Virus record (IMG/VR): IMGVR_UViG_3300048438_000153
Location: 62,001-126,000 of that record
DNA: 64,000 nucleotides
Strand: one strand, 5' to 3'
Part shown: positions 6,755 to 51,880 of the stretch, piece by piece
Position numbering within the stretch: position 1 is the stretch's first letter
Layout of the letters: every line of letters starts with the position of its first letter
Translations under genes and position numbers: made by a program
Notes under the pieces: generated by a model
The model's input: only the letters and a program-made list of their open reading frames with translations
Told to the model about the DNA's origin: nothing
The model's database searches: none

Positions 6755-9700
6755 TTAGATATCCTCTACTTCTTTTTCAAAGTCAGCGCGAACCATTGCT
6801 TCGATCTGCTCTTCGCTCATCTTATATATCTCAGCCAAGCTCTCAACCGTGTTAGGGTTAATACCCACTTCAACAATCTCACTATCGCCAACCACATCGG
6901 AGGCGAGGAACATAAGAAGGTTCAGGTCTGCGAGCAGACCCTTGAAGTTATTCAGAGTGTTTTTGTAAAGGGAGAAGGTAATCGAGTTAGTGCCTCCGAG
7001 AAGACCTTGCCATTGTTTACCATCTTCAATCTTCTCTACAAGCGTATCGAGATTTCCTGAAAGATAGTTCATACCCTTGCCTAGAGCTTGAGTAAGGACT
7101 AAAGAAGATTCTTCTTCATTTAAAATAGCCAGACCTTGAGGTGTAGAGTCATACCCCTTTCGGAAATCTTTGTATTCATCGTCAGATTTGATTTCAGGAT
7201 GCACCGCTCCGACAAGGTTTCTGAAGAAACTCTGAAGGTGTACTGAAAAGCCGACATCTGAGAACACATTGGGCTTAGGATAAGAATAAGCTCTACCCTC
7301 TGTATCTACTAGAACAACGCTGTTAGTGTCAGGGTAAGGGGTCTTTAAGAAAGCAAAAAGAAGCCCTCTCTCAAGCTCGTCCTGACTCACAGAAGGGAAA
7401 GACGTAGGGTCTTTCTGAATCAAGTCGGTGATCTTATCAACTTGAGCTTCTCTCGTGTTCTCATACACAGGCAAGAAAGTACGGCTCTCGAAAGGGTACT
7501 TGTTTCTGAGGGCGTTAATCTTACGAATAGCGTTCGCCCTGTTCGCAACTGAAAGATCCTTAACATTAGTTAGGATGTTGGAGTTCTCTCCAAAGAACTC
7601 ACCCACGCCAGTTGCTTCAAGATTAACGACAGCAGAGATACCCGCTTGAACAACCTTGTTGTATGATTCTAAAATGGCTTCTTCTTGCTCTTCAACTGCG
7701 GGCGCATAACGGTAGTTCTTAGAAACACCGCGATCTTGTCGGGCTAGTCTGAGAGCATCTCGAACGTCCTCTTGATACTTCTTTCTAGCCTGACCGCGCT
7801 TTCTTTGAATCTCATGAGTACCTGACTCAATGTCGTCGAGCTCTTCCCTCGCCTCTGCGGTATCTTGACCCTCAAGAGACTCTATACGAGTCTCAAGCTC
7901 TTTTGAGATGCTCTCAAGGTTCGCCTCATGCTCCTCTTTCAACTCTTTCTTAACGCGATCTTCAAAAGTCACGATATTAGAGTGAATGTAAGCGGTACGA
8001 AGCTCCGTGACTTTCTTGAGAAGTTCTTCGCCCTCAACAATCTCAGTAAGCTTACTCTGTGCTTCGGTGGCTTTCTGAACATAGCCATTAGCCATATTCC
8101 TTGAGAAAGAGTCGAAAGCTCTGATCGCGTCAAGATTACCACTGAGGAAATCCCTGATCTCCTTCGACCCTATAGAGATCTCTTCCTCAATCTGCTTTTC
8201 AGACTTAGACATAGCTTCGTCAAAGAAGCTGTTAGAAACCCTCAACTCTTTTGACGCCCCTGTCATGATCGACTTGGCGTTGCGGTTGGTGAGCTTCTTG
8301 CCTTTCTTGTTATCACCCGGAGTCACTTTACCCTTAGCATCAACAGTCACCTCAAAGCCCTTCTTCTTACACACCTTGTCAAAGGTTTCGGCGGAACCTG
8401 AATGCTTGATGATCTCATTTCTGATTGAAGTAAGAATCTTTGAAGTTGTCGGATCAGAGCTCTTTTCTGCGAAAGAAAGAGTTTTCTGCGCGACAAACGT
8501 GTCCCAACCGAGAGATTTAAGAACCTGACGGCTCGTTCGGTCGGCAACTGCTTCGTGTGGGAAGTAGTGAGACCCGATCCTTCTAGCGGGGTCGCCCACG
8601 TTCTCTTTAATTGAGTCTCTGAGAAGTGAGCTGACTGTGCTTCCGAGAGACTCCTTGTAGGTTTCACTGAGGATTTCTTTCTGAGCATCAACCTCAACCA
8701 CAATCTTAGTGAGTAATTTCTTGGCTTCTTTGCCCGCTTGCTTGTCTCCCTCGTCGAACAAGTCGAGGATACTATACGCTTCCTCAATCAACTCCTGATC
8801 TGTTGAACTCACTTGCCCAAGAGTCTCAAAGGCGTAATCGACATCTTCCTGTTTTTTCTTGCCTTTAGAAGTAAGGGTAGAGATCGCTTGCTGAACTCTC
8901 ACAAGATCCCTCAGCTCACTTGTAGACTGATCTACTGCTTGCTTAGCCTCTGTGGTGAGGTTTCTCTGAATGGCGTTTGCAACGCTCAAGTCTCTCGCAC
9001 TTAAGCCTTTCAAACCTGATCCTGTCGCCATACCCGCAATAGCTGTGACAGCATCCACACTCTTAGACCCCTGAACAGGAGTGTAGTCTGAGACACTATA
9101 GCGAGAAAGCGGGTGTCCTGAACTTTCCCCTACAGGTAGGAGAGTCAGCTCACTTCTGCGCTGATTGATCTTATCAATATAAGAGAGCTGACTCTCTATA
9201 TGATCCCTTAGCCCTCCCATATCGCTATCTTCATCAATATCGCCTGAAAAGTCGTACTTGTCAGCGACCTCTTTGATGGCATCTTTAAAGGCTTTGACTA
9301 AACGCTTAGAAGACACATAAAAAGACGCATCTCTTAAGCTGTAAATCTCTGTAGGAGCTGTGTTTAAAACTAGGTACAACTCACCCACAACAGACTCAAT
9401 ATTTTCGAGCTTATCGTAATCACCGTCAATATCATCTTCTACAGGGGCGTTAATCTGAGCACTACGACTCTTGATCAAGCTACGAGACTCTCTCTTAAGG
9501 GTGGCTTCATCATAACCACCGTCAAGGAAAACGAGCTCTCTTGGCTCAAGCTGACCGCGCCTGAAGAGCTTGTCATAGACGATTCCCCTGAGCTTCTTCT
9601 GATTACTCTCTGAGTCAGAAATGAGAGAGAGATTATCAAGTAAGAAACGCAGATCCTCTTTAGTGACCCTATCCGTAGTCACAAGGTCAAGAATAGCGTG

Positions 9701-10750
9701 TGCATAGTCCGACTTCTCTTCCTCAGAAGGACTGCCTTTCTTATAGGTAGCCCTCGCATCCGAAAGAGACTCACGCGCCTCACCTGTGTCTGACTGCGTT
9801 CTTTCTTTATTGACGACATCCACGAGATCAGAGTAAGCCTGACTCACGTTCTCAAGAACAACGTCGAAAGCTTCCTGATTACCGAAGCTCGCAGACTTGT
9901 CTTCTTTAACCGCTCGGTCAATGATGTCGAGCATCGTGTGGTTAACGCGAGAGACTTGGCTAAAAATGAATCGTGACCTGTTTTTCCATGAGAACACGCC
10001 TTTACCAATCTTAGGGTCGTTCTCACCGAGTGCTTCGATCTTCTTCTTTCGGAGAGTAGCTGACCTAAAGAGCTTATAGAAGAGAGTCCCACTCTTTGGG
10101 CCTTTCTTAAGAGATGACCGAGAAAGAAAATCCTCTTCTGAACCAACGTCCTCTGACCGCCCGATTAGCGCCTCTAGAATCTTCTCGACGACGTACTCTC
10201 CGAGAGGGTAACCACCGATGTACTGAGCTTGCTCGTAAAGCATACCGCCCTTACCGACTCTCTGTTTAACGATGCTCGCGACAACCCACTCAATGCTGTA
10301 AGTGACCTCAATCGACCGATCAATAATCTTTCTTAAAAGCTGATCTTTCTGAGCGTCTGCCACACCTGTACCTTGAAAAACCACCTCAGCGAATGAAACA
10401 CCCTCGGGAGTCTTGAGCTTCTTGAGTGCTCGGACAAGTTGAGAGGGCTCAGAAAGAGTCCTGAACCTTCTGAATGCCTGTTGAGAAGGGAAATCCTCAA
10501 CATCAAGACCAAGAGCGTAAATGAGCGCGGTGTTGTGAATCATGAAGCGGAAAGAACCGAGTAACTCGCGCACCGCGAGTCTGTCCTCGCGAGTTACGGC
10601 AATCTTAGAGAAAGAAGAGGCGATCTTCTTTCTGAGTGCCACACCAACTTTAGCATTGATTGATGCCGTCTTGATGTCTGAAGCGGGTCGAGTGCCAATC
10701 TCCTCTAAGGAAAGTATTGAAGGCACGATCTCGTGTGCAGAAAGAAGCAT
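6755..10750 (-). CDS. large hypothetical helical/coiled-coil protein (~1330 aa), probable internal virion protein
   Basis: Long ORF. I placed the start at Met 10750 (GGAGA RBS) rather than 10771. It carries an N-terminal IKTAS...KKIASSF motif. No family recognised. Confidence 0.6.
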   Translation of the reverse strand: MLLSAHEIVPSILSLEEIGTRPASDIKTASINAKVGVALRKKIASSFSKIAVTREDRLAVRELLGSFRFMIHNTALIYALGLDVEDFPSQQAFRRFRTLSEPSQLVRALKKLKTPEGVSFAEVVFQGTGVADAQKDQLLRKIIDRSIEVTYSIEWVVASIVKQRVGKGGMLYEQAQYIGGYPLGEYVVEKILEALIGRSEDVGSEEDFLSRSSLKKGPKSGTLFYKLFRSATLRKKKIEALGENDPKIGKGVFSWKNRSRFIFSQVSRVNHTMLDIIDRAVKEDKSASFGNQEAFDVVLENVSQAYSDLVDVVNKERTQSDTGEARESLSDARATYKKGSPSEEEKSDYAHAILDLVTTDRVTKEDLRFLLDNLSLISDSESNQKKLRGIVYDKLFRRGQLEPRELVFLDGGYDEATLKRESRSLIKSRSAQINAPVEDDIDGDYDKLENIESVVGELYLVLNTAPTEIYSLRDASFYVSSKRLVKAFKDAIKEVADKYDFSGDIDEDSDMGGLRDHIESQLSYIDKINQRRSELTLLPVGESSGHPLSRYSVSDYTPVQGSKSVDAVTAIAGMATGSGLKGLSARDLSVANAIQRNLTTEAKQAVDQSTSELRDLVRVQQAISTLTSKGKKKQEDVDYAFETLGQVSSTDQELIEEAYSILDLFDEGDKQAGKEAKKLLTKIVVEVDAQKEILSETYKESLGSTVSSLLRDSIKENVGDPARRIGSHYFPHEAVADRTSRQVLKSLGWDTFVAQKTLSFAEKSSDPTTSKILTSIRNEIIKHSGSAETFDKVCKKKGFEVTVDAKGKVTPGDNKKGKKLTNRNAKSIMTGASKELRVSNSFFDEAMSKSEKQIEEEISIGSKEIRDFLSGNLDAIRAFDSFSRNMANGYVQKATEAQSKLTEIVEGEELLKKVTELRTAYIHSNIVTFEDRVKKELKEEHEANLESISKELETRIESLEGQDTAEAREELDDIESGTHEIQRKRGQARKKYQEDVRDALRLARQDRGVSKNYRYAPAVEEQEEAILESYNKVVQAGISAVVNLEATGVGEFFGENSNILTNVKDLSVANRANAIRKINALRNKYPFESRTFLPVYENTREAQVDKITDLIQKDPTSFPSVSQDELERGLLFAFLKTPYPDTNSVVLVDTEGRAYSYPKPNVFSDVGFSVHLQSFFRNLVGAVHPEIKSDDEYKDFRKGYDSTPQGLAILNEEESSLVLTQALGKGMNYLSGNLDTLVEKIEDGKQWQGLLGGTNSITFSLYKNTLNNFKGLLADLNLLMFLASDVVGDSEIVEVGINPNTVESLAEIYKMSEEQIEAMVRADFEKEVEDI

Positions 10751-10797
10751 AGTCATCTCCATTAAGGTCATATTTTATATCCTACCCACGTATCAAG

Positions 10798-11885: not shown

Positions 11886-12454
11886 GACTTGTTGATCACG
11901 ACCACATCATCTTTAGATGGGTATCTCCTTGCAAGCGAGCGCCACACACGCAGAGCGTGATCTGAAGTGGGGTTCGAGTTACAGTAGTTGGGAATGAACA
12001 AGAAAGGGACTCTCTTAGTGCGTCTCTCAAAGACGTAGTGGGCGAGTCTTAAGTAGCCCTCAAGACCACACTTACGCCCCCTGAAGCCCTCTTCTAAGTA
12101 GGAGTTAATCACTTCCACGACGTATACCTTACCATCAGGATTGAGGAGAGCTGAATGGTCAGAGACAAGCTCAGCCATTTCCTCATAGCAGACGTACTCA
12201 TCTAGCTCATCCATATGGACTAGAGAAACCGTAGCCTCAAAATCGCCTATTAACTTGTCTTCAGAGTATGCCTGTATGACACTCGTCAACGAGTCGGAGT
12301 CTATGTCCCAACCGCTCTCTCTGTGGAAAGAGACTTGAGACTTAGCGACGAGACGGCGCTCTCTCGACATCCTCTCAGGCGTAAGTGAGTAATCTTCAGG
12401 TAGAGTGCCTTTTGCCATCATGTGTCGGCTCGCGACTCGGATCGACATACTCAC
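11882..12454 (-). CDS. GNAT-like fold protein with RVASRH leader
   Basis: FRGRKCG resembles an acetyl-CoA loop. C-terminal TSDHALRVWRSLARRYPS. Paralogue of 15121-15630. Confidence 0.5.
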   Translation of the reverse strand: MSMSIRVASRHMMAKGTLPEDYSLTPERMSRERRLVAKSQVSFHRESGWDIDSDSLTSVIQAYSEDKLIGDFEATVSLVHMDELDEYVCYEEMAELVSDHSALLNPDGKVYVVEVINSYLEEGFRGRKCGLEGYLRLAHYVFERRTKRVPFLFIPNYCNSNPTSDHALRVWRSLARRYPSKDDVVVINKS

Positions 12455-12819: not shown

Positions 12820-12820
12820 T

Positions 12821-15120: not shown

Positions 15121-15630
15121 TTAGGGGGCTTCAAGTACTGCGATACAATCGCCCGATGAAGGATACCTTCTTGCTAAGGATGTCCAGACCCGCCTTGCCT
15201 CGTTTGAGGTCACGCCATCCATGCAATAGTGGGGTACAAAGAGGAATGGCTTGCGCCCATTGTCTTTCCAACCCTCTCCCATACACTTCAGATATAGGCT
15301 CTTGCCTATTCCTTGATTTTGATATTCTGAGTTAAGTTCGCTTTCGTTCATGATAAGCACTGTCACCTCACCTCCCCTACCACGAAGAGAGGGAAACTCT
15401 TGGAGTAGGATTCTCACATCACGAATGCAAGGTGAGTTTGTCAGATCATTAGAACTAGTGAGGTCAAAGGTTGCTAGACTGGCATTGATGAGCCCCACTA
15501 CCTTTGACCTCTCACCCGTAGTTCTTTTATAAAGAACTATGTAGAAGTGGTCTCCATCTGTTTCTCTGACATAAACAAGAGAAGAAGACGCTGACAGGTA
15601 CATAGAGGCTACTCTCTCGCAAGGCTTCAC
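15121..15630 (-). CDS. GNAT-like fold protein with RVASMYL leader
   Basis: EYQNQGIGKSLY matches the Q/RxxGxG motif A. Also TSNEARRVWTSLARRYPS. Confidence 0.6.
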   Translation of the reverse strand: MKPCERVASMYLSASSSLVYVRETDGDHFYIVLYKRTTGERSKVVGLINASLATFDLTSSNDLTNSPCIRDVRILLQEFPSLRGRGGEVTVLIMNESELNSEYQNQGIGKSLYLKCMGEGWKDNGRKPFLFVPHYCMDGVTSNEARRVWTSLARRYPSSGDCIAVLEAP

Positions 15631-15641: not shown

Positions 15642-17252
15642 TTACCTTCTGAGGCCGAGCTCAGAGAACACCTCAAAGATGAAATCTTGCGCCTCTTTAG
15701 GTTCGCCCACCCTCTTAGGAACACCATCCACGACGACTCTTATATTCTTATAGTTAGACCCTGGTCCATCTTGGTTGACGAAGAAGCCCTTTACCTCGAC
15801 CGTAACGCCCTTAGCGGAGAGCCTGATGATGTGGAAAGTGTTTGTCCTGTCAACGTGGTGTACTACGTCTAGCTGACCTTTTCTGAACATCCACCTCAGT
15901 TGGTCTACAAACCTCTTCATCTCAAAGTTAGACATCGGTGTGCTGAGAAGCCCAAAGAAGCGCGCTGTCCTAATTTGATCGCGAGTAACCTCTTGACCGA
16001 GAGGGTCGATCACCTGATGACCATCATCTAAGAGAATATCAAGACACTCCTTCAAAACCCTGTTAATCTTCCTCTGATTTGAAAGCTCTGAAGAAGCCCC
16101 CGCGCTGATGTCAGAAAGAACAAGCTCTGCTTCTATGGTATTAGGAGAGCCATACATAGTGTCTGCTGAAAAGTACACTCTGTTGAAGCCTCTGAAAGAT
16201 CCTCTTAAGGGTTTGAATCCACGACTAGGGCTGAGAGTGTAAGAGACGCCTTCCGAGTCAGTGATGGTAAATCCATTTTTGTAGAAGGCTTCCGCGTTCC
16301 TGACATATTCAGGGTCATCACTCTGCGCTTTATCTCTCAAGTTCAACCTAACCCAAGTTTGGAGAGCTAAAGTGAATGGCTTGAGAGATCTTCTCAAGTT
16401 CCCTCCCTTGATGTCCCCAATCTCTCGTTCTTTCCCGTTCAGATTGACAGAAATAGAAAGGGTTTTAACCTGCCCTCTAGCTCGGGGCAACCAATCTCCC
16501 ATACTTGGGACAACTACAGTGTAAGGACCTCCGAAAGAAGCTCTTCTTTGGTTAGATGGGGTGTTAACTATGAAGTTAAGATCCTCTAACTTATTAATAC
16601 ACTTCTTAACCTTGATCTCCCCTCTAGTTAAGCGCCCCGCAGAACCTTTTCCTGACGTATTAACAAGACTAGGGACTTTTAAAGTTATTGATTGAGCAGG
16701 TAGTTTATAGCCTTCGTATGATACCACCCCGCCTCCCACCACAGGTAGTCTGAACTCCATTCTTTCTTCTCTTTCACTTCGGTAAAAAATACCATCATTT
16801 TTTGCTCGCGAACCCTCTAGAAAGTGCCTCGCTCTCTCCTTGTATTCGCTCTTATCACCTGAGTTCCAAAGTTCGGCGAGGCCGTCAAGGTAATTCTGAA
16901 TAGCTTTTATAAGCTCTTCTTTTGGAACACAGCGTGAATCCATTCGGGCTTGAGAGTGCGACGTCAACTCAAGAGTAATCTCTACCGTATCCCCCTCATA
17001 GGGATGGTTGTCTAATCTATGGAAATAGCGGTGGGTCAAATTCTGATTGGCGTATACAAGGTTTTCGTACTTTCTTTGAAGATCATAGTTTCTTGAGTGA
17101 ACAACAAACATACCGTCTATTTCAGACTCTGTAATCTCAGGTCCGTAGACTGTTCTGATCCTTTCCCTGATTAAATCAGGCCCGTCACACCTTGTTCTGT
17201 CTCCAAGATTATTAAAAAGTAGGGGCGGTTTTATAGGTCTTCGAGATGTCAT
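15642..17252 (-). CDS. hypothetical multidomain protein with a DUF4258/RelE-like motif
   Basis: LTSHSQARMDSRCVPKEELIKAI resembles HAxxRMxxRxI. Internal RRAS and IRTA motifs. Confidence 0.5.
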   Translation of the reverse strand: MTSRRPIKPPLLFNNLGDRTRCDGPDLIRERIRTVYGPEITESEIDGMFVVHSRNYDLQRKYENLVYANQNLTHRYFHRLDNHPYEGDTVEITLELTSHSQARMDSRCVPKEELIKAIQNYLDGLAELWNSGDKSEYKERARHFLEGSRAKNDGIFYRSEREERMEFRLPVVGGGVVSYEGYKLPAQSITLKVPSLVNTSGKGSAGRLTRGEIKVKKCINKLEDLNFIVNTPSNQRRASFGGPYTVVVPSMGDWLPRARGQVKTLSISVNLNGKEREIGDIKGGNLRRSLKPFTLALQTWVRLNLRDKAQSDDPEYVRNAEAFYKNGFTITDSEGVSYTLSPSRGFKPLRGSFRGFNRVYFSADTMYGSPNTIEAELVLSDISAGASSELSNQRKINRVLKECLDILLDDGHQVIDPLGQEVTRDQIRTARFFGLLSTPMSNFEMKRFVDQLRWMFRKGQLDVVHHVDRTNTFHIIRLSAKGVTVEVKGFFVNQDGPGSNYKNIRVVVDGVPKRVGEPKEAQDFIFEVFSELGLRR

Positions 17253-17716: not shown

Positions 17717-20010
17717 TAGGCGTAAGAGGCATTCTTTCCGAACACGTTATCATCTAGAACCTCTTCGATCTCACCGTAGTTCTCCTCATACCAATCGAGG
17801 TGACCTGGCTCATCGACCACATCGTCTTTCGCGCCCTTGAAGTACGCGATAATGATAGGTGTGATGATCTCAAGAAGAGGGATAGAAGCAGTCGCCCAAA
17901 GCGCCTCAATGCCTGTCAGCTTAACTAAGACATAAGGCAAGAGGTAGTGCTCAAGAACCTCCACAAACGCCACCGCGATTGCCATGAGAACAACCTTGAA
18001 TACGCGCATAGGCCACTTGATATACCACTGTTTATCTGCATCTGCATCCCAACCGTATTTCTTAATGATCTCAAAGGCGTGTTTGATGATCTCGATGGGG
18101 TTGATCGTATGCCATGCTTTCTTGAGGGCTCTCTCAATAACTTTCTTACTGTGCTCCTGAGCAGCCTCCTCAACCAACTTCTTCTTAACTGATGGAGGTA
18201 CAGGGAGTTGGTTAGTGTCTCCCCACACATAACCCTCAATAAACTCAGGGCTCTTATCGCTAGGAGGATCGAGCTCATCTACATAGCCTCCGCGAGACAT
18301 GGCGCGCTCTTGGTTACGGAGCTTTGCACCCTGTTCAAACTCTTCAAAGTCTGCGTCAACCTCTGCCTCAAGCATCTTCTCCGCGACTTCAGGGGCAATC
18401 GCCTCAATCACGTCATCCATGAGGTCATCTACAGGCATCGTGAAAAGGTCGAGATGTCTGCGGAACTTGTCGATAGGGTTCACGACATACTTAAGAAGCA
18501 TCGCCTTAAGTGAGTCTTTCGCGCCCGCCTGATAGTACATAGCAGCGGTTCTGATCTGACCCTCGTAAGAGTTCTGACTCGCTCTTCTCTGCATAACCTG
18601 ACGGACAACCTGTCTCTTCAAATGTCTTTGATCCATTTCTAGCTCTCTTTCTGAATGGGGGATCGTTTTCTTATATGGCTTCATTAACGACTTATCGAGA
18701 ACCCTACTTGCTGAAGAGGTCTTTGAGCTTTTCTTACTTAAGCTAAGGGCATCTACTAGCTCTTGGTCTATTTCTTTCTCTCCGCTTAAGTAAGACCTCA
18801 TCTCATTACCTATCCCCACAGGGTCTTTCTCTAACTCTTCTAAAATCATGTCTTGAACGTCATAGAAGTGTTTCATCCGCGCCAACATTACGAAAGTAGG
18901 TAACTTATCTTCTGAACCGAGCTTCAGGGAGTTAAAGAAACTCTGAAACTTCTTCATCGGAGTATACGCCTCTGAGTGACCCTCATAACCTAACTGTTTT
19001 AGACCCTTATCTATCGAGGGTCTTGCGTTTTCTTGAAAGTCAGAATAAAGCCCACATATCTTTTCTCTCGCGTCTTTTGGAGAAAGAGATTTGTCTTCTA
19101 AGACAGACTGTAGCTTTTTACTGTACTCAGCCTCCACCCCTTCGGGAGTTTGATAGCCTGAGTATATATCTGAAGCTAGGCTGTCGAAGTTAGAGGCACT
19201 TTCTCTCCTTTTGCTTGAGAGCTGATGTAGTGCTTTCTTGTAGAAAACCATCCCCGCCCCAAAAGCAACTGCGGTAGACCCCACTGTAGCAACCACACCT
19301 GTAGCACCTAAAGCAGTTAAGATATTGGTGGTCGCTAACCCCGCAACCGCATTAACAGAAGCAACCCCCCCTTGAGCTCCAGCGCCCCAACCTAACAGGG
19401 GGAGAACCGTAGTCATAGTCCAATTAAGAGAGCAATTTCTAACCATCTGCCTGACTTCAGGATTCTCATCTTTTTTCTTTGACTTCAAGACCTTAAGAGA
19501 CAGAATATCTCCGAGCATCTTCGGAGTTCTTCTTAGAAACTCGTCGCCGATAGATGCGTCCCAAAACTGCTTCAACGCACCCCTCTGAAAACCATCAGTC
19601 TTAAAGCTACGACTAACCTCACTCGCTAAAGCTTTTAAGGACTCTTCAGAAGTCTCTTGGAGAGTCAGGTTGAGCTTGTTATCAGAAAAGACGTCTTCAG
19701 GTAGCCCGAGATTAGGCTTAGATAAGTTCTCAACAACCTGCTTGGAGATGTCTTTCTGAACCGCTTCGTTGAAGCCCTCAAATAACTTGAGAGCGAAATC
19801 ATATCTAGCTTTGTTTAGAGGATCAGCTCTTTCTTTCTCTGAAAGGTAAGACCATCCCTTCACTGTGGTGTACTGAACAATGTTTCCTGTAGGCTTGAAA
19901 CAGTCCTCCCAATCTTTAAACTTTTTGTCGATAAGGTCAAAGACTGTCTCGCTCTCTGATTTTTTAAGTGCTTTCAGGTATCTTGAAGCGACTCTTCTTG
20001 ATGCGCTCAT
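17713..20010 (-). CDS. hypothetical 765-aa protein with two hydrophobic (TM-like) regions and an RVASRYL leader
   Basis: A Gly/Ala-rich hydrophobic stretch at about aa 200-255 and a C-terminal hydrophobic cluster. Several RxA motifs. Confidence 0.6.
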   Translation of the reverse strand: MSASRRVASRYLKALKKSESETVFDLIDKKFKDWEDCFKPTGNIVQYTTVKGWSYLSEKERADPLNKARYDFALKLFEGFNEAVQKDISKQVVENLSKPNLGLPEDVFSDNKLNLTLQETSEESLKALASEVSRSFKTDGFQRGALKQFWDASIGDEFLRRTPKMLGDILSLKVLKSKKKDENPEVRQMVRNCSLNWTMTTVLPLLGWGAGAQGGVASVNAVAGLATTNILTALGATGVVATVGSTAVAFGAGMVFYKKALHQLSSKRRESASNFDSLASDIYSGYQTPEGVEAEYSKKLQSVLEDKSLSPKDAREKICGLYSDFQENARPSIDKGLKQLGYEGHSEAYTPMKKFQSFFNSLKLGSEDKLPTFVMLARMKHFYDVQDMILEELEKDPVGIGNEMRSYLSGEKEIDQELVDALSLSKKSSKTSSASRVLDKSLMKPYKKTIPHSERELEMDQRHLKRQVVRQVMQRRASQNSYEGQIRTAAMYYQAGAKDSLKAMLLKYVVNPIDKFRRHLDLFTMPVDDLMDDVIEAIAPEVAEKMLEAEVDADFEEFEQGAKLRNQERAMSRGGYVDELDPPSDKSPEFIEGYVWGDTNQLPVPPSVKKKLVEEAAQEHSKKVIERALKKAWHTINPIEIIKHAFEIIKKYGWDADADKQWYIKWPMRVFKVVLMAIAVAFVEVLEHYLLPYVLVKLTGIEALWATASIPLLEIITPIIIAYFKGAKDDVVDEPGHLDWYEENYGEIEEVLDDNVFGKNASYAY

Positions 20011-20401: not shown

Positions 20402-21233
20402 GCTCTCTCACTTTGCCTTTCTTAAAAGAGGGCTCTATATCCCGTGTTTCGTATCGACCCTCTTCATTCCAACTTAGCTCTGTATAAAAGTATCTACCAT
20501 CAGCCTCAAAAGTAAGCTCTAAACCATCGGGATCTCTGTACAGGTCGAGATCTACCTTCTCAAATTTAGTCTGTATAGGTAAGCCATGTAGAGAAAGATA
20601 GTCTTTTAAAGCGGTTTCCAACTCTTCTGAGGTGACGTAAATATCATCTTCTCTATCTAACTCTCTCTGCATAAGAATGAGCATAGAGAAGAAACCAATA
20701 CCTCCCCCCGCTCTCTTCTCAAGAGACCCTGAATTCTTAGAGAGTAGCGCCTTGAGCTTCTCGTAGATCTCGTTGTTATTCTTACGATAGATCTCTCCTG
20801 AATCTGTGTGGAGAGAAAAGCGAGTGTCGCCATGTTGGAAACTATATATATTCCCAATGCCTCCCATACGTCTCCCACCACCTAAACTTGGGGATCTTCC
20901 CGTAGACCTTGCTCTCTGCATTAAGAACAGCGAAGGGTTCGCGCTTTTGTAATATCCGTCGTAGACCCTCTCTAAGTCTTGTATACACTTCCCTACGAAA
21001 TGGAAATGAACTCCATGAAATCTTACGTCCATCGTTATCTTCTTCTTGTCAGATAAGTCGATAGAAACATCAGAAACACCTCTTGTCGCTTTGACGTGGC
21101 TCTCTAGAAGTTTTTGCTCGCTCTCAAGAGTTACCTCTTCTCGACCCTTAAAAAGACCGAAGATCGCCTGCTTTTCGAGGCTTGCTACTCTCATCTCAAG
21201 GTAGTTGACTATTTCTGAAGCTGTTCTTCTCAT
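20394..21233 (-). CDS. hypothetical protein with MRRTASEI leader
   Basis: Leader MRRTASEIVNYLEMRVASLEKQA. The first domain is similar to that of 36865-37959. Confidence 0.7.
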   Translation of the reverse strand: MRRTASEIVNYLEMRVASLEKQAIFGLFKGREEVTLESEQKLLESHVKATRGVSDVSIDLSDKKKITMDVRFHGVHFHFVGKCIQDLERVYDGYYKSANPSLFLMQRARSTGRSPSLGGGRRMGGIGNIYSFQHGDTRFSLHTDSGEIYRKNNNEIYEKLKALLSKNSGSLEKRAGGGIGFFSMLILMQRELDREDDIYVTSEELETALKDYLSLHGLPIQTKFEKVDLDLYRDPDGLELTFEADGRYFYTELSWNEEGRYETRDIEPSFKKGKVRELK

Positions 21234-29740: not shown

Positions 29741-30757
29741 TTAGCTCTGAGCATCAATCGCGTGACTAAGAATCGTCCCGTGATATAAGATATCTTTCAG
29801 GGTTTCCACGTCACTGACCTGTTTCGAGGTCACTCTGATGTGTGCCTCTTGATATGACCTCCCTGACACACTAGGGAAATCATATCGAAAGAACAGGATG
29901 TTCCCATCTTCCCCGATGAGAGTGAACCGTTCTTCAGACGCCTTCATAAACAGTGGCGAGTATTTTCTGATGAAAGTATTGATCTCCCGATCAAGAGCCC
30001 TCTCGTCTTTCACGGAAACGACCTTCTCAGAATACTGTCTTTTAGAAGGTGGCTTGAGAGGGTTCTTGTCTAAGAAAGACATCTCTAAGGTGTAAAAATC
30101 AGAGCTAGAGATCAAGTACATATTCGCGACTCTAATCGCGCTCGCTCTCTTCGTAGAGCCTATATGCTCTATCACAGACCTGTTGTTGTCGATAAGAACA
30201 ACATCCCCACTCTCTACAGCTTCATAGAGAGCTCCATCGACACGAGGATGGATAGACAAAATATCCTCTCCTAACATCGGAACACCGTCTAAAGAAAACA
30301 GAGTTCTCATAAGAACACTCGCGCTATCTACAATGGCTTCGGCGATATCTTCCACATAAGGCTTCAGACTGTATTGAAGATCAACGGTCGTAAAGCTGTA
30401 ACCTCTTGGATTGAGCGCGTCTACTTTGTTATGTGGCTGTCCCATAACTTTCTTAAAGATCGTCTTGAACTCCCCTACCTCCATCACAGTAAGAACAGGT
30501 TTGATACCCCCCTTTTTCATCTTTACCGCGCCCATTGTCTCGTCAAGAGAAAGGATCATATGCCACACTCCTCTTTCGCATTTAATGACCCAAGTGTCGT
30601 CTACAACAACCTGACCATTTTTGCGGTAGGGGATCTTTTTCTTAGCACTCCATGTACTTTTAGGGACGTGAGTCACAGACCAATCAAGAGAGGGGGTCTT
30701 TCTATTCAAAACGCCCACTACAGGATCAGCCCATTTCTCGTCTGCATACTCCATCAC
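29741..30757 (-). CDS. two-domain hypothetical protein with an internal KRAS-RVANMYL junction
   Basis: The C-terminal domain is paralogous to 30754-31188. Confidence 0.65.
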   Translation of the reverse strand: MMEYADEKWADPVVGVLNRKTPSLDWSVTHVPKSTWSAKKKIPYRKNGQVVVDDTWVIKCERGVWHMILSLDETMGAVKMKKGGIKPVLTVMEVGEFKTIFKKVMGQPHNKVDALNPRGYSFTTVDLQYSLKPYVEDIAEAIVDSASVLMRTLFSLDGVPMLGEDILSIHPRVDGALYEAVESGDVVLIDNNRSVIEHIGSTKRASAIRVANMYLISSSDFYTLEMSFLDKNPLKPPSKRQYSEKVVSVKDERALDREINTFIRKYSPLFMKASEERFTLIGEDGNILFFRYDFPSVSGRSYQEAHIRVTSKQVSDVETLKDILYHGTILSHAIDAQS

Positions 30758-36868: not shown

Positions 36869-37959
36869 ATGCTCCAACCTATAGGGACGTATTTATCTTC
36901 AAGCCTCACGCCGTTGTAGGAGTACTGTTTCTTCTGAGGACCTATATACCTATCTCTTGTAAACTCTCTGTCAGAGTCTTCTATATACTCCTTAAGTTTA
37001 CGTCTCTCATGATCAGTCATCTTTCTTTTCTTCGGCTTATTGTCAACGTAGATGAGCTTCTTTTTGAGGACTTGCCTTAAGAAAGAGTAAGCGAGGTCAC
37101 TGTGGAGTGTGTTCCTTGCCTTCCTACCGTATGTCTCCTCTATAATGTCCGTCACCTCGTCAGCGTCAACAGCGAGGTGGGCGCTATCCGCCCAATCGTA
37201 AAGGTCTGAAGCGCCTTTTAAGAATGTCTTAATTTCAGACGAGTCAGAAAGACTAGCGAGCTTGAAATACACTTCGACCCCTCTGTACTGAAAGCAAATC
37301 GTATGGCTCTTTTCTTTTAAGAAAGAAAAGCCATGCCTCTTGAGGAGTTCATTTGATCTAAGGGTGTCTTGATACTCGGGCTTACTTTGATACATAGACT
37401 CAGAGTTCCATCTCTGATAGTATTCAGGAAACTCAGGGTACGCGCTCATCTTGTCGAGCCGAGCGATTCTCCCTCTAGAGCTATTCCTTTCTCCCCCTTC
37501 TAAATCGAGTAACTCCGTGAGCCCAATAACAGTAGAAAGAACAGAATAAAGCCCCTTTGTGGTGGAGATCACGACTGATTTCTCAAGTCCTCTTCTGTCA
37601 ATCTCATACCTAGTGATGGGGATCTGCCCCGACCTCAAGCCTGTGGGTCTAATTTTCGAGTCATAAACTCCGAATCTCTCTGTTTCGTCGTGAGTAACCT
37701 TTCCGTTAAAAACGAAAATCTCCCCCCGAAAGATAAGATTGATTCTGAGACCCCCTTTTTTTGAGATAGAGACATCGACTCGATCAACGTCGTCAAGGTT
37801 CGCTTTTATCGCGCCCTCAATCGACTCTTCTTCTTCTCTAGTGTAGCTTTTAAAGAGGTTAAGAAACCCTGACTCTGTTTCTGAAGCAAAGTGATCACCC
37901 TCAAGTCGGGCGACCCTGATCTCTAGGTCGGAAAGGATTTCTGAAGCTGTTCTTCTCAT
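36865..37959 (-). CDS. hypothetical protein with MRRTASEI leader
   Basis: Leader MRRTASEILSDLEIRVARLE, plus an internal RIARLDK. Confidence 0.7.
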   Translation of the reverse strand: MRRTASEILSDLEIRVARLEGDHFASETESGFLNLFKSYTREEEESIEGAIKANLDDVDRVDVSISKKGGLRINLIFRGEIFVFNGKVTHDETERFGVYDSKIRPTGLRSGQIPITRYEIDRRGLEKSVVISTTKGLYSVLSTVIGLTELLDLEGGERNSSRGRIARLDKMSAYPEFPEYYQRWNSESMYQSKPEYQDTLRSNELLKRHGFSFLKEKSHTICFQYRGVEVYFKLASLSDSSEIKTFLKGASDLYDWADSAHLAVDADEVTDIIEETYGRKARNTLHSDLAYSFLRQVLKKKLIYVDNKPKKRKMTDHERRKLKEYIEDSDREFTRDRYIGPQKKQYSYNGVRLEDKYVPIGWSI

Positions 37960-41246: not shown

Positions 41247-41249
41247 AGC

Positions 41250-44957: not shown

Positions 44958-44960
44958 GCT

Positions 44961-46184: not shown

Positions 46185-46185
46185 G

Positions 46186-47682: not shown

Positions 47683-48354
47683 ATGAGAACAATCACAGCA
47701 AGAGTCGCCACAAAGTTCTTAAAGAAAGCAGCGGAAAGTCTTGAGATACACATCTATGACTTCGATGGAACTCTGTTCCGTAGTCCTGAAGCTCCTGAGT
47801 GGTGGAGTAAAAGAAGATATGGTCAGTGGCACTCCAACCAATCTTCATTGGGTCAGCCCTTTGTGCCTAACAACCCTTCTTCAGACTATTGGATTAACGG
47901 CGTAGTAGAGGAAGCAAAGAAGTCCATAGCAGACTTGAATACTTGGGCAGTCATGTGTACAGGACGCATCGACACAGGAGCTCTCAGATACAGAGTGGCT
48001 GAGTTACTGAGGCAAGAGGGTCTTGATTTCGATCAGAACTTTCTTAACGACACAGGTAGGCTGACAAGACCCTACAAGAAAGTGACTCTAATCGAACTCC
48101 TGAAGCAGTTCCCACAGGTCAAGAAAGTCGTTGTGTGGGAGGACACTCAGAAAAACCTCGACGCGCTCGAAAGCATCTGCGACAGGATCGGGATCGAGTT
48201 TGAAGGGAAGCTCATTTCTGAGAGGCTTCTCTCTTCAAACCACATCTCAGAGGATGAATACATAGACTTTCTTAGAGGAGAGCTCTCCGCTAAAGAGTTC
48301 ACTCAGATCTATAAGGCTCTACAGAAGAGTAGAAAGAGAAAGCAAGAATTATGA
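47683..48354 (+). CDS. HAD-superfamily phosphatase (Swiss-Army-Knife RNA-repair type) with RVATKFL leader
   Basis: IYDFDGTLFRSP, MCTGR, YKK, WED. Confidence 0.8.
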   Translation: MRTITARVATKFLKKAAESLEIHIYDFDGTLFRSPEAPEWWSKRRYGQWHSNQSSLGQPFVPNNPSSDYWINGVVEEAKKSIADLNTWAVMCTGRIDTGALRYRVAELLRQEGLDFDQNFLNDTGRLTRPYKKVTLIELLKQFPQVKKVVVWEDTQKNLDALESICDRIGIEFEGKLISERLLSSNHISEDEYIDFLRGELSAKEFTQIYKALQKSRKRKQEL

Positions 48355-48671
48355 GAAAGACAGCCTCTTCAAAGAGAGTCGCAAAGATGTACTTCTTAGC
48401 GAGCACAAACTTGCCTCTCTTAGAGGAAGCCTTACCAAACACCTTCTCAGAAATCGAGCCCTTTAACCGAGTCTCTTGTAGTCACGACATTATGGAGAGC
48501 CTCAAGGCTGAGAAAGAGTTCAACCAAGAGACTCTCTTAAGGGTCTTGTCTGAGTACACTCAAGTAGATACCAACCTTGTCATGGCTGATGTCTCTCACT
48601 TATTCTCAGACGTGGGAGTAGCTCAGAAAGAAAAGCTCTTATCAGCTCTCACCACAGATAGAGAGCTGTAG
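48351..48671 (+). CDS. hypothetical protein with MRKTAS-RVAKMYF leader
   Basis: Leader motif; ATGA overlap. Confidence 0.6.
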   Translation: MRKTASSKRVAKMYFLASTNLPLLEEALPNTFSEIEPFNRVSCSHDIMESLKAEKEFNQETLLRVLSEYTQVDTNLVMADVSHLFSDVGVAQKEKLLSALTTDREL

Positions 48672-49451
48672 AGTGAGGTAGGTAGAAAGAGAGTTAAGCT
48701 CTTTCACTACCTTGAAGGGGTCGAACTTAAGACGACGATTATCACCTTTAAGTCTAGAAAGAGGCTTTCGGAGTTTTTTCTGAACCTCTTGAGCCATTGA
48801 CTCTTCAAGCTTTGACGTAAGCGCGAAGGCTGACTCAAGATCCTCGATCAAGTCTTGACCAACTTGACCTTGCTCTGCGTCAAGAACAGCCTCTTCAAGT
48901 GCTCTCTTAAGCTTCATAAGAACAGGCTTGCAAGAGATGACTGATTGGTTCGCCCACGAGCCTGCGTGAGACTCTAGACCCACAGGATACTGACCGAGAG
49001 GGAGCTTCCTGTTGTTTGGAGCGCGGTGGTAGTCTCCAAAGGCAGAAATATAACCCTTCTTAACCTTACTTAGCTCAAGGCGTTGAAGCTCGTACTTTGC
49101 ACCCGCGAGGTTCTTGAAGGTATCGCGTCTCTCTTGGAAACGAGGCCCAAGACGACCATACCTCTTGATGAGTGTGTAGCCCCCGACATTCTGAGGGTTC
49201 TGAACGATCAGCATCTCGTAATACTTAGACTGATTCTTCTCGCTATCAATCTTGTAAAGCATGGAGGCTTCCCCCTCCCTTGCTTTCTGACGTGTAAGAC
49301 CCTCAGATTTGAGGTAGGGCTTACCCGCAGCAGTCTTATTGATTTGTTGAGAGGCGCGCTTCGCCATAGCCTGACGAACATAAGCTCTTTTCTCTAGATA
49401 CTCGATGCGGTCTTCAAGGGCTGTCAGATTTTCTGAAGATAACCTATACAT
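48642..49451 (-). CDS. WGR-domain protein
   Basis: KIDSEKNQSKYYEM...LIKRYGRLG...A..EL..L..SKVKKGY. Confidence 0.75.
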   Translation of the reverse strand: MYRLSSENLTALEDRIEYLEKRAYVRQAMAKRASQQINKTAAGKPYLKSEGLTRQKAREGEASMLYKIDSEKNQSKYYEMLIVQNPQNVGGYTLIKRYGRLGPRFQERRDTFKNLAGAKYELQRLELSKVKKGYISAFGDYHRAPNNRKLPLGQYPVGLESHAGSWANQSVISCKPVLMKLKRALEEAVLDAEQGQVGQDLIEDLESAFALTSKLEESMAQEVQKKLRKPLSRLKGDNRRLKFDPFKVVKELNSLSTYLTLQLSICGES

Positions 49452-50396: not shown

Positions 50397-51095
50397 TCAG
50401 TCCTCGTGAGTGTGGTAGCCCTCTCCGAAGAGAAAGTAACGGTGGAGGTCAGAGAGCAGAGCGTGGGCGTGTGAAATCTTATCCTCAACCCAATCTTCTA
50501 GCTCCTCACCCTCATGTACTTGACCTTCAAGGGTGCGGAGAAAGTCATCCATCTCTCGGATATTCTGAAGGCTCATGTAAGAGCCTCTGTGATGCCCCCC
50601 TCCTTGCTTCACAAATCGGGAATCGAGATCTCTTTCTAGCTCGTCTTCTTCCTCAATCATATCTACGAGCTGATCCGCGAGGTCATCAATCAAGCCCTCC
50701 TCTTCAGCGATCTCATAGAGATCATAATCTGACGCGGTGCGCTTGTAGAACTCACCCTCAGAAATGAAGCCGTCATCGTCGTCATCGAGAAGATCAAAGC
50801 CCTCTTCCCACTCGCGCTCAGAAATCAAACCGTCGCCATCAATGTCGAGGTCGTCGAAGTGAGGGTTATCCCACTCTTCTTCTGAAATAAAACCAGAGTT
50901 ATCTGTGTCGATCTGATCGAAAGCGTACTCCCACTCTTCGGGAGAAAGGCGTCCGTCATCGTCTTCGTCCATGTCTCGGAAAGAAGATGATGAAGTCTTA
51001 GTCTCACCGTAGTCGTGCCTCATGCGTAGAGGCTGTGTAAGAAAGGGGCTTCTCTCGCGAGAGAAATCAGGTGAGAATTTATGTTTGTAGCTCAT
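50397..51095 (-). CDS. four-EF-hand (calmodulin-like) protein with an extra C-terminal domain
   Basis: Loops DEDDDGRLSPEE, DTDNSGFISEEE, DIDGDGLISERE and DDDDDGFISEGE. Confidence 0.85.
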   Translation of the reverse strand: MSYKHKFSPDFSRERSPFLTQPLRMRHDYGETKTSSSSFRDMDEDDDGRLSPEEWEYAFDQIDTDNSGFISEEEWDNPHFDDLDIDGDGLISEREWEEGFDLLDDDDDGFISEGEFYKRTASDYDLYEIAEEEGLIDDLADQLVDMIEEEDELERDLDSRFVKQGGGHHRGSYMSLQNIREMDDFLRTLEGQVHEGEELEDWVEDKISHAHALLSDLHRYFLFGEGYHTHED

Positions 51096-51112: not shown

Positions 51113-51880
51113 TTAGTGGTTGTTGATGTAGGCAGATGCAACGCGCTCAATCATTGCATACCTCTCTCCGCTTGGGCTCTTCTTATGTTTGGGCTTACGC
51201 GATCTACCCTTTGCCACATCTTTACTTCTGTTGTGGTGCTTACCCTTACCTGATGACCCCACGCCCCCATCAAACATACCCTGAGTGCTCGGGTCGCGGA
51301 ACTTAGGTATGGTGTTAGGGTCTTTTTTCTTTTTCTTCTTAGAAGCCGTCTTAAGACTCGCCATCACCTGACGTCCGTCTTCGGTGATCTCACGATCAAG
51401 CATGACCGCAGGCCGACGAACAAGGTAGTTAGGCCATTTCTCAAACCACTTAGAATAAAACTCGTCTTCCCCTACCTCTCTAACAGTCTTATCCGGGTTC
51501 GGGATGTTCGGGTCAGCGACGTGAACGATGTAGTTACCGCGCTCTCCTGTGACATCAAAGATCAGGCTCGCGTGACTCCAATCACGACCCTCGGGATTCC
51601 ACGCAATTAAGACAGGCTTTCCCTGATCAGTCCATGCTTTCACCTGAGAAAGAGTAGCAGGTGTGGTGAGCGTAGCCCGACACCCAAAGTACTGAGCGCA
51701 AGCTAAGACTTCTTCCCATCGAGCACCCTTCATAGGTTGCGCGCCGATGACCTTGTTTACCTGATCTTCGTTGCAGTCAACACCGAGCGCGTTGAGAGCC
51801 ATACACGTCGAGGTAGAGACACAGCTAAACTGAGATCTCTGTCTGATGGGCTTTACGTTAGCCTTCGCTGTTCTTCTCAT
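51113..51880 (-). CDS. C39-like cysteine peptidase with MRRTA leader
   Basis: RQRSQFSC (Q..C), WSHASL (H), VADPN (D). Start placed at 51880 from the RBS and the TAGATCGTCTAT motif at 51918-51929. Confidence 0.8.
   Translation of the reverse strand: MRRTAKANVKPIRQRSQFSCVSTSTCMALNALGVDCNEDQVNKVIGAQPMKGARWEEVLACAQYFGCRATLTTPATLSQVKAWTDQGKPVLIAWNPEGRDWSHASLIFDVTGERGNYIVHVADPNIPNPDKTVREVGEDEFYSKWFEKWPNYLVRRPAVMLDREITEDGRQVMASLKTASKKKKKKDPNTIPKFRDPSTQGMFDGGVGSSGKGKHHNRSKDVAKGRSRKPKHKKSPSGERYAMIERVASAYINNH

What the first reader, a model, noticed from the sequence alone, without database searches (positions are those of the whole stretch)
6755..51880. Shared RTAS/RVAxxY leader and junction motifs on about 15 unrelated proteins: candidate virion targeting and processing system
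Seen directly. Leaders: MRRTASEIVNYLEMRVASLEKQA (21233), MRRTASEILSDLEIRVARLE (37959), MKRTASEILSDLDRRLARLERTAS (29386), MRKTASSKRVAKMYF (48351), MSASRRVASRYLKA (20010), MSMSIRVASRHM (12454), MKPCERVASMYL (15630), MRTITARVATKFLKKAA (47683), LEDRIEYLEKRA..KRAS..KTAA (49451), MRRTAK...KTAS...IERVASAY (51880), IKTAS..KKIASSF (10750). Internal copies: KRASAIRVANMYL (29741 gene), KRTAS (EF-hand), GRTAG/ERTSG (TopIB), RRAS/IRTA (17252). The attached cargo domains are unrelated: GNAT-like, HAD, WGR, TopIB, EF-hand, peptidase and orphans. Most of these genes carry the late-type motif, and I did not see such leaders on the replication or tail proteins. Inference: an amphipathic RVAxxY/RxAxLE helix acts as a capsid-targeting signal and [KR]-x-A is a maturation-protease site. 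This would be analogous to T4 capsid-targeting sequences and jumbo-phage head-protein processing, but with a different code, so that the phage packages and injects a swappable effector arsenal.
Basis: partly seen in the sequence, partly recalled or inferred. Interest (0 to 1): 0.88.

Follow-up and report, generated by a model that had tools for sequence, protein, structure and literature searches.

The report
Portable leader tags on huge-phage proteins
A clade of uncultured huge phages attaches two short, almost invariant address tags to over a thousand otherwise unrelated proteins and always encodes a leader-peptidase-like enzyme carrying the same tags, which looks like a protein-sorting and processing code, probably for loading enzymes into the virus particle.

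Summary
The window is part of an uncultured huge phage (149-kb and 275-kb contigs). Two tag types exist.

- **F1:** a 24-residue N-terminal helix, M-RRTAS-E..-LE-R(V/I)ARLE-(R/K)xAS.
- **F2:** R(V/I)Axx(Y/H/W/F)(L/M/I), found at the extreme N-terminus, the extreme C-terminus or a domain junction.

A degenerate DNA pattern for F1 hit 86 sites in viral contigs, each directly after a start codon, and none in 185,579 prokaryotic genomes. A leader profile found 1,067 protein clusters. Serine and arginine codon choices show selection on the protein, not the RNA. In a structure model the tag is a free helix outside its GNAT-fold cargo.

New here:
- A highly conserved cysteine peptidase (window 51113-51880) has the fold of double-glycine leader peptidases and itself carries both tags.
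- A third motif, LTQPLxxRxDYG, sits next to it.
- F1 genes lie downstream of, and in the same direction as, a 91-100% conserved major head protein.

Capsid targeting with proteolytic processing is the best reading but is unproven, since there are no virion data. The bare [KR]-x-A four-letter motif is at most weakly above chance (29 vs 19.5) outside the first 30 residues. Verdict: new variant of a known kind, high interest.

The parts
21162..21233 (-). F1 leader (residues 1-24) of the 279-aa orphan protein 20394-21233
37888..37959 (-). F1 leader (residues 1-24) of the 364-aa orphan protein 36865-37959
   Evidence: same protein on 9 public contigs
29386..29457 (+). F1 leader (MKRTAS...RLARLERTAS) of the 116-aa protein 29386-29736. 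A relative (P0128) has this leader duplicated in tandem.
49383..49451 (-). Degenerate F1 leader of the WGR-domain protein 48642-49451. A 263-aa WGR-family relative (L035) carries a canonical F1.
48351..48395 (+). Hybrid leader MRKTASSKRVAKMYF (F1 start plus F2) of the 106-aa protein 48351-48671
19969..20010 (-). F2 leader (RVASRYL at residues 6-12) of the 765-aa orphan protein 17713-20010
12419..12454 (-). F2 leader (RVASRHM) of the 190-aa GNAT-like protein 11882-12454
15595..15630 (-). F2 leader (RVASMYL) of the 169-aa GNAT-fold protein 15121-15630. In the model, residues 1-14 are a detached helix with mean pLDDT 43 for residues 1-10, while the domain scores about 90.
47683..47733 (+). F2 leader (RVATKFL) of the HAD/polynucleotide-kinase-like protein 47683-48354
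   Evidence: orthologues keep it
51113..51880 (-). C39_2-like cysteine peptidase. Its N-terminus MRRTAK (51863-51880) resembles the F1 start, and the F2 motif MIERVASAYINNH (51116-51154) is its extreme C-terminus. It is the candidate leader peptidase.
51006..51041 (-). Third motif F3 (LTQPLRMRHDYG, residues 19-30) in the acidic EF-hand-like protein 50397-51095, the gene next to the peptidase
   Evidence: (27 unique copies, next to or fused with the peptidase)
30113..30151 (-). Internal junction copy KRASAIRVANMYL (residues 203-215) in the 338-aa protein 29741-30757
15945..15971 (-). Degenerate internal junction copy (RTARFFGLL, residues 428-436) in the 536-aa protein 15642-17252. The C-terminal domain is a separate F2-led gene in relatives.
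10607..10690 (-). Possible degenerate copies (RPAS, KTAS, KIASSFS; residues 28-55) in the 1338-aa protein 6755-10771. Uncertain.
28761..29336 (+). ClpP-family protease whose best PHROG matches are head maturation proteases. It is the second candidate processing enzyme.

Best explanation
F1 and F2 are portable terminal targeting and docking peptides. A conserved phage-encoded partner recognises them. The likeliest destination is the inside of the assembling head, so that a changeable set of enzymes and orphan proteins is packaged and enters the host with the DNA.

F2 is the older tag, found across the whole peptidase-bearing clade. It works at either terminus or in a linker. F1 is a lineage-specific elaboration: a coiled-coil-type helix bracketed by two R-x-A-S motifs.

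The C39-like cysteine peptidase, which carries both tags itself, is the probable processing enzyme. It would remove leaders and cut fused cargo at junction copies and at the LTQPLxxRxDYG motif. The ClpP-like head maturation protease is the alternative.

**Shown:** the tags; their position; their selection at the protein level; their modular spread; the peptidase fold, catalytic residues and tag-bearing termini; the gene contexts.

**Inferred:** the destination, the cleavage, and which enzyme does it.
For: **The tag is real and phage-specific**
- The 41-bit F1 DNA pattern gave 86 hits in viral contigs, all directly preceded by M or MI apart from one read as II (L057). It gave 0 hits in 596 Gb of prokaryotic genomes.
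- The 53 unique F1 proteins fall into 45 cargo clusters.
- A leader profile found 1,067 clusters at 50% identity. In 141 of the top 150 the match begins at residue 1.

**Selection is on the protein**
- Ser6 uses TCA and AGT about equally. Arg15 and Arg18 use both AGR and CGN codons.

**The tag is a separate, position-flexible element**
- Terminal F2 copies were about equally often N-terminal (26) and extreme C-terminal (24) in 80 loci; 37 further matches were internal, some of them chance.
- The leader is a low-confidence free helix on a confident GNAT domain.
- Internal and tandem leader copies occur at domain junctions.

**The peptidase**
- It has 442 homologues at 50-94% identity, while the DNA polymerase of relatives is 54-56% identical.
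- Q, C, H and D are conserved.
- Its best structural match is a double-glycine leader peptidase bound to its leader.
- F2 is tethered directly after the catalytic domain in most homologues.
- Arrays of F1 genes lie just upstream of it.

**Head-module context**
- The large terminase lies about 3.6 kb downstream of the peptidase in 7 loci.
- The major head protein was identified at E 6e-51 and is 91-100% identical in the best 80 of 577 loci.
- All 24 F1 genes in head-protein loci lie downstream on the same strand.

**Cargo types**
- They resemble effectors delivered with DNA (PMC5512222).
- The closest precedent is the T4 capsid targeting sequence (PMC9026906).
Against: - There is no virion proteomics and no isolate. 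The only GenBank phage with the peptidase is an unannotated 485-kb metagenomic record.
- F1 density is similar around the DNA polymerase (6.3 per 100 kb), the peptidase (9.8) and the head protein (7.2). Proximity to head genes is therefore only modest evidence.
- The leader end is [RKG]-x-A-[ST], not Gly-Gly, and no cleavage site can be derived.
- The peptidase fold is also used by cell-wall isopeptidases (PeiR), so it could simply be another cargo.
- A tag that ends a protein would lose only a few residues on cleavage. That argues for docking rather than processing at those sites.
- The ClpP-like gene sits after the primase, not in the head module.
Confidence: 0.45

Rival explanations
1. Cytoplasmic pro-protein control. 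The tags are leader peptides in the bacteriocin sense. The C39-like peptidase binds the helix and cuts it off, or cuts fused cargo apart, to activate or time the proteins. No capsid is involved.
For: - Peptidase fold, catalytic residues and extreme conservation.
- F1 gene arrays directly upstream of the peptidase.
- Junction and tandem leader copies.
- F3 at the peptidase/neighbour junction, or fused to the peptidase.
Against: - C-terminal F2 copies with nothing after them have nothing to release.
- There is no Gly-Gly site.
- It does not explain why more than 1,000 unrelated proteins would need one common activation step.
- Terminase and head-gene contexts point to the particle.
Confidence: 0.2
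2. Docking to another hub inside the infected cell, such as a replication or assembly compartment, the phage actin-like filament, or the phage chaperonin. This would be analogous to clamp-binding or SSB-binding short motifs.
For: - The motif tolerates either terminus and internal positions.
- Many cargo proteins act on nucleic acids: TopIB, HAD/PNK, WGR, SNF2.
- An actin-like gene and a GroEL-like gene lie near tagged genes.
Against: - The DNA polymerase, helicases, primase and methyltransferases lack the full tags.
- No candidate hub has been identified.
- Most cargo proteins are small orphans.
Confidence: 0.15
3. Terminal degrons. The tags mark phage proteins for timed destruction by the phage ClpP-like protease working with a host unfoldase.
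For: - A ClpP-family gene is present.
- From established knowledge (not tested here), ClpX-type degrons occur at either terminus.
Against: - The best PHROG matches are head maturation proteases, not ATP-dependent ClpP.
- C-terminal F2 copies are followed by 1-14 variable residues rather than a fixed free end.
- Tagging large late proteins and the peptidase itself for degradation is implausible.
Confidence: 0.07
4. Export signal for a peptidase-containing ABC exporter, as with double-glycine bacteriocin leaders.
For: Fold match to PCAT1, ComA and LahT peptidase domains.
Against: - The peptidase is standalone.
- No ABC transporter was seen in about 108 kb of this genome or in the 80 peptidase loci.
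- The leaders have no Gly-Gly and no hydrophobic segment.
- Cargo reaches 765-1,341 aa.
Confidence: 0.03
5. Not a protein signal: chance similarity, simple paralogy, or an RNA-level element at the start codon.
For: - Codons 2-3 are almost always AGA AGA.
- Some cargoes are paralogues.
Against: - Shuffle and permuted-motif controls.
- 0 hits in prokaryotic genomes against 86 in viral contigs.
- Ser6 is encoded by both TCA and AGT.
- C-terminal and internal copies exist.
- 45 unrelated cargo clusters.
Confidence: 0.02

Closest known systems
T4 capsid targeting sequences on internal proteins, removed by the prohead protease gp21 (PMC9026906)
   Same: - A short N-terminal tag is shared by otherwise unrelated, poorly conserved proteins.
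- The protease itself has processed termini.
- The cargo includes host-directed enzymes.
   Different: - The sequence code is different, with no L/I-x-E site.
- One tag (F2) also works at C-termini and junctions.
- The candidate enzyme is a C39-like cysteine peptidase or a ClpP-type protease, not a gp21-type serine protease.
- The scale is over 1,000 cargo clusters.
- Packaging has not been demonstrated.
Double-glycine leader peptides and C39 peptidase domains (LahT150, PCAT1, ComA)
   Same: - The peptidase fold and the Q/C/H/D catalytic set.
- The substrate model: an N-terminal amphipathic leader helix on hypervariable cargo.
   Different: - There is no Gly-Gly site.
- The peptidase is standalone, with no exporter.
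- The cargoes are folded proteins of 57-765 aa or more, not peptides.
- The system is phage-encoded.
- The peptidase carries the tags itself.
Encapsulin cargo-loading peptides and the C-terminal capsid-targeting tail of the HK97 protease (both from my own knowledge)
   Same: A short terminal peptide at either end of diverse cargo, or of the protease, directs it to the inside of an HK97-fold shell.
   Different: - The consensus sequence is different.
- Binding to the shell has not been tested here.
- The shell here belongs to a DNA-filled huge-phage head.
Polyvalent proteins and MuF or P1 Dar-type packaged effectors (PMC5512222)
   Same: - The domain repertoire: SNF2 helicase, peptidases and nucleic-acid enzymes.
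- Proposed delivery together with the DNA.
- Proposed proteolytic processing.
   Different: - The cargo is mostly split into separate genes, each with its own tag, rather than fused into one giant protein.
- No MuF domain was found among the 104 tagged proteins scanned.

Membership tests
T4-type capsid targeting sequence system | Short N-terminal propeptide shared by unrelated proteins | tested here: met
T4-type capsid targeting sequence system | Propeptide ends in the L/I-x-E site cut by a gp21-family protease | tested here: not met
   The leader ends in [RKG]-x-A-[ST]. The only head-protease-like gene is ClpP-family. No gp21-family hit appeared in the Pfam or PHROG scans.
T4-type capsid targeting sequence system | The tag is sufficient for incorporation into the head, and the cargo is present in virions | not testable with these tools
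   There is no isolate and no proteome.
C39 double-glycine leader peptidase systems | Papain-like C39 fold with conserved Gln, Cys, His and Asp | tested here: met
   Pfam PF13529 and PF03412. Q14, C20, H103 and D123 are conserved. Model pLDDT is 90, and the top Foldseek hits are 6mpz, PCAT1 and ComA.
C39 double-glycine leader peptidase systems | The substrate leader is an N-terminal amphipathic helix ending in Gly-Gly | tested here: not met
   The helix is present, but positions 21-24 are [RKG]-x-A-[ST]. Gly is seen at position 21 in only 8 of 53.
C39 double-glycine leader peptidase systems | The peptidase is fused to or linked with an ABC exporter | tested here: not met
   The proteins are standalone, 161-447 aa. 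No transporter was seen in the 80 loci.
C39 double-glycine leader peptidase systems | Cleavage of the leader by the peptidase | not testable with these tools
   The structure tool returns no coordinates, so even docking of the tethered F2 tail could not be examined.
Encapsulin-type cargo-loading peptide | Short peptide at the N- or C-terminus of diverse cargo | tested here: met
   F2: 26 N-terminal and 24 C-terminal copies.
Encapsulin-type cargo-loading peptide | The peptide binds the luminal face of an HK97-fold shell protein | not testable with these tools
   The major head protein is identified, but no complex could be modelled.
Polyvalent / MuF-anchored packaged effectors | MuF or portal-fused anchor domain | tested here: not met
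   No such Pfam hit among the 53 F1 and 51 F2 proteins.
Polyvalent / MuF-anchored packaged effectors | Effector-type domain repertoire encoded near packaging genes | tested here: inconclusive
   SNF2, DUF2958, peptidase, TopIB, HAD, WGR and GNAT domains are present. The terminase and head protein lie nearby in some loci.
Sec/Tat signal peptides | Hydrophobic core segment after the basic N-region | tested here: not met
   The leaders are amphipathic and charged throughout.

The most novel reading that the evidence does not exclude
A huge-phage clade runs a general protein-addressing code. Any protein given a 7-24-residue tag is loaded into the head and then trimmed by a C39-like cysteine peptidase. 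That would be the first non-serine maturation or leader protease of a tailed phage. The many-to-one dependence would help explain the near-frozen tags and peptidase; the major head protein is also 91-100% identical, although it stays so in lineages that lack F1. It would also provide a natural, programmable system for packaging cargo.
Probability: 0.3. Interest if true: 0.92.

Novelty: new variant of a known kind. Interest (0 to 1): 0.8.

Why it matters
If correct, this names the sorting signal, the likely processing enzyme and more than a thousand candidate cargo families for a large, uncultured group of huge phages whose proteins are otherwise almost all orphans.

It turns the question of what these orphan genes do into a testable list of proteins that probably act at the moment of infection. 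It extends capsid-targeting tags beyond the T4 group with a different code and a different class of protease.

It also offers a short tag that could be used to load foreign proteins into phage heads.

Even if the destination turns out not to be the capsid, a phage-specific short-motif code of this size has not been described in the literature I could search.

Tried and rejected
- **Near-identical DNA search against GenBank phages:** no match.
- **Pfam and PHROG scans of the leader proteins and many structural candidates:** almost all without hits.
- **k-mer search for a promoter shared by leader genes:** only purine-rich ribosome-binding-like words came out. Two promoter-like classes were then seen by eye and by pattern, but the link to leader genes is modest.
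- **Guess that the 456-aa protein L026:1966-3336 is the major head protein:** rejected, as it has only 6 homologues. The real head protein turned up by accident through an internal F2-like match.
- **Idea that the F1 gene after the ClpP-like protease is a scaffold:** rejected, because that adjacency exists only in this lineage.
- **Host mimicry of a cellular signal:** rejected by 0 hits in prokaryotic genomes.
- **Docking of the tethered F2 tail in the peptidase groove:** could not be judged, because the structure tool returns no coordinates.
- **Walking the 149-kb contig**: found more F1 genes but no recognisable portal, terminase or head protein in the parts read.
Full report
**Where the window comes from.** The window is the reverse complement of part of a 149,403-bp metagenomic contig (JGI 3300047375). 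The same sequence occurs in a 275-kb IMG/VR contig. It encodes a family-A DNA polymerase, DnaB-like and SNF2 helicases, a primase, baseplate-like proteins and many orphans. Relatives with 54-56% identical polymerase are contigs of up to 375 kb. The closest GenBank record is an unannotated 485-kb uncultured phage. There is no cultured relative.

**The observation.** Shuffling each of the 64 window proteins 1000 times gave these results:

| Motif and region | Observed | Expected |
|---|---|---|
| F1 start motif, first 30 residues | 6 | 0.04 |
| F2 motif, first 30 residues | 5 | 0.01 |
| [KR].A[ST], first 30 residues | 12 | 1.7 |
| [KR].A[ST], rest of the proteins | 29 | 19.5 |

For the last row, 30 of 1000 shuffles reached the observed value. 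The tags are therefore real, but the bare four-letter motif is not a usable site elsewhere. Replication, nucleotide-metabolism and tail proteins lack the full motifs.

**Two tag families.**
- F1 is M-RRTAS-E-(V/I)(I/L)-xx-LE-x-R(V/I)ARLE-(R/K/G)-x-(A/S/T)-(S/A/G), followed by a Ser/Thr/Gly-rich stretch.
- F2 is R(V/I)A-xx-(Y/H/W/F)(L/M/I), usually 3-9 residues after the initiator Met.
- The 48351 protein has both. F1 itself contains R(V/I)A.

**F1 beyond the window.** A degenerate DNA pattern for F1 carries about 41 bits, so by my estimate about 0.1 chance hits are expected. It matched 86 places in IMG/VR. Every one is preceded directly by M or MI, apart from one read as II (L057), and has a Shine-Dalgarno-like GGAG upstream. 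The same pattern matched nothing in 185,579 bacterial and archaeal genomes. F1 is therefore specific to these phages and does not mimic a host signal.

The 53 distinct F1 proteins fall into 45 cargo clusters, and only one has a Pfam domain, WGR. A 35-column leader profile searched against 1.84 billion cluster representatives found 1,067 clusters at E<=0.001. In 141 of the best 150 the match starts at residue 1. This genome has at least eight F1 genes.

**Protein-level or RNA-level selection.** Ser6 is encoded by TCA (26 sequences) and AGT (25). Arg15 uses AGA, AGG and CGN codons. Arg18 is mostly CGY. Leu12 uses CTT or TTA. That pattern means selection acts on the peptide. Only codons 2-3 are fixed (AGA AGA), which may reflect translation initiation.

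**F2 is a terminal, position-flexible motif.** In about 1.2 Mb of related loci the F2 pattern gave 42 unique hits, against 4-12 for six permuted control motifs. Of these, 29 lay within ten residues of an ATG. In 80 loci around the peptidase there were 26 N-terminal copies, 24 extreme C-terminal copies and 37 internal copies, some of the internal ones being chance.

F2-bearing proteins include C39 peptidases, HAD/PNK-like proteins, a TopIB, DUF2958 proteins and an SNF2 helicase. The window's 169-aa and 190-aa F2 proteins are GNAT-fold acetyltransferases, closest in structure to tRNA-acetylating enzymes such as AtaT and TacT. In the model, residues 1-14 are a helix with very low confidence (mean pLDDT 43 for residues 1-10) on an otherwise confident domain. 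This is a free appendage, not part of the fold.

**Junction copies.**
- The C-terminal 110 residues of the window's 536-aa protein resemble, by eye, a separate F2-led 118-132-aa gene in relatives, and in one relative the two are in one reading frame.
- The 338-aa protein has a perfect F2 at residues 209-215, and the sequence from there on resembles the 48351 protein.
- Elsewhere there are proteins with a tandemly duplicated F1, with a leader-cargo-leader-cargo arrangement, and with the half-leader R(V/I)ARLE(K/R)Q(A/S)(S/G) between two domains.

**The peptidase.** The gene at 51113-51880 is a Peptidase_C39_2 protein. It has 442 homologues whose catalytic domain is 50-94% identical to the window protein, which is far more conserved than the polymerase. 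Gln, Cys, His and Asp are conserved.

An AlphaFold model of a 188-aa homologue (pLDDT 90) matches best the double-glycine leader peptidase LahT150 solved with its leader, then PCAT1 and ComA. It also matches the pseudomurein isopeptidase PeiR.

In most homologues the domain is followed directly by ...GRQ(I/V)MAS-(R/K)(I/V)AS-x-(H/Y)L, which is an F2 motif. Short forms stop a few residues later. Long forms carry variable extra domains, and many end in a second F2. Some begin with an F2. The N-terminus MRR-x-AKA resembles the start of F1.

The peptidase is found in contigs of up to 618 kb. F2 accompanies it throughout this range. F1 occurs only where the peptidase is at least about 80% identical to the reference homologue P0013: 17 F1 genes in 174 kb, against 0 in 583 kb.

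**A third motif.** LTQPL(M/R)xR(R/H)DYG occurs 27 times. It is usually 20-60 residues into the gene next to the peptidase, after an F2-like start. In the window this gene is the acidic EF-hand-like protein. In other cases the motif is fused to the peptidase, or sits at the peptidase C-terminus as in the GenBank record. An aromatic residue followed by Gly at a junction beside a papain-like peptidase is a reasonable candidate cleavage site. This is inference only.

**Context.**
- In seven distant loci the large terminase lies about 3.6 kb downstream of the peptidase.
- A 293-aa major head protein (PHROG 2522, E 6e-51) is 91-100% identical in the best 80 of 577 loci, including the same huge contigs.
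- All 24 F1 genes in those head-protein loci lie 0.5-4.6 kb downstream on the same strand, often separated from the head gene only by a homing endonuclease.
- Overall F1 density is similar near the polymerase, so this adds only modest weight.
- The window also has a ClpP-family gene whose best PHROG matches are head maturation proteases. It lies after the primase in all relatives.
- Several leader genes (20010, 37959, 47683, 49451) and the baseplate-like genes 6690 and 10771 have YTTTAT(C/A) 30-63 nt upstream. Replication genes have TTCTGATAT.

**Interpretation.** The tags behave like addresses. They are short, detached from the fold, moved between unrelated genes, nearly invariant while the cargo is free to vary, and usable at either end.

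The best-fitting known model is capsid targeting with proteolytic trimming, as in T4 (PMC9026906). The cargo resembles the DNA-co-delivered effectors described for polyvalent proteins (PMC5512222). The peptidase adds a second, compatible analogy: leader peptides read by a C39 peptidase.

The destination and the cleavage are not shown. The rival explanations, with probabilities, are given in their own section.

Noticed in passing
window 39161-47364: A cluster that looks like DNA hypermodification. It holds four to five paralogous N6/N4-methyltransferase-like genes sharing the C-terminal motif CEPIWVWSKGEAPEPKW, plus thymidylate-synthase-like (42537-43238), asparagine-synthase-like (43219-44130) and PALP (44124-44957) genes.
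   Followed up: no
L027:73-951; L196-L275: The clade's 293-aa major head protein is 91-100% identical in the best 80 of 577 IMG/VR loci, although the polymerases are only 54-56% identical and the peptidases 52-97%. It contains an internal F2-like RVARV(Y/F)M.
   Followed up: partly
L182:1267-1842; L015:2852-3922; L163:3198-4172; fam 17 in L145/L147/L169: A fourth conserved N-terminal motif, roughly LR..LIRLAHENP.LR..LLPLL, occurs on otherwise different proteins. One has a weak tRNA-ligase CPD-like hit and others are DUF2958 proteins.
   Followed up: no
L145:8061-10628, L147:6972-11219, L163:10322-11251, L170:8093-10273; P0057, P0059, P0071 and others: Two more conserved C-terminal endings were seen. 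...V(D/E)EWLAWE(D/E) ends the protein after the peptidase in distant relatives. ...FE(A/V)VAYLS ends several peptidase extensions and a 183-aa protein of LR745208.1.
   Followed up: no
L100:8946-9941 (outside the window, same genome): A phage-encoded actin-like protein (Pfam Volactin) lies directly upstream of an F1 gene. A Cpn60/GroEL-like chaperonin lies about 4 kb upstream of the peptidase in 18 distant loci.
   Followed up: no
window 20081-20401, 17315-17716, 10920-11885; L220:6384-7295: A GIY-YIG endonuclease gene, a NUDIX gene and an orphan gene sit on the opposite strand inside the minus-strand late block. A LAGLIDADG homing endonuclease often follows the head protein gene in relatives.
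   Followed up: no
window 47368-47622: A small Lys/Ala-rich protein has a weak Hc1 (chlamydial histone-like) Pfam hit. It lies between the methyltransferase cluster and the tagged HAD gene.
   Followed up: no
window 51116-51400 and homologues: The peptidase extensions share a conserved basic stretch, about R(E/S)(R/K)DVAKGRSRK(P/E)KHKK, just before the terminal F2. It may bind nucleic acid.
   Followed up: no
L183:17407 onward: A reading frame called at 4,204 aa follows the tail-fibre-like genes beyond the window start.
   Followed up: no
L192:7192-7767: An F1-variant leader (MEKKMTNILRELMVRVAHLEKKAG) is attached to a cargo that looks like a pentapeptide-repeat protein (judged by eye, not scanned). 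If so, it could be a DNA mimic.
   Followed up: no
window 12451-12858: A staphylococcal-nuclease-fold gene (Pfam SNase) lies between the two tagged GNAT-like paralogues. Its 3' end overlaps the start of the tagged gene 11882-12454 by 4 nt.
   Followed up: no
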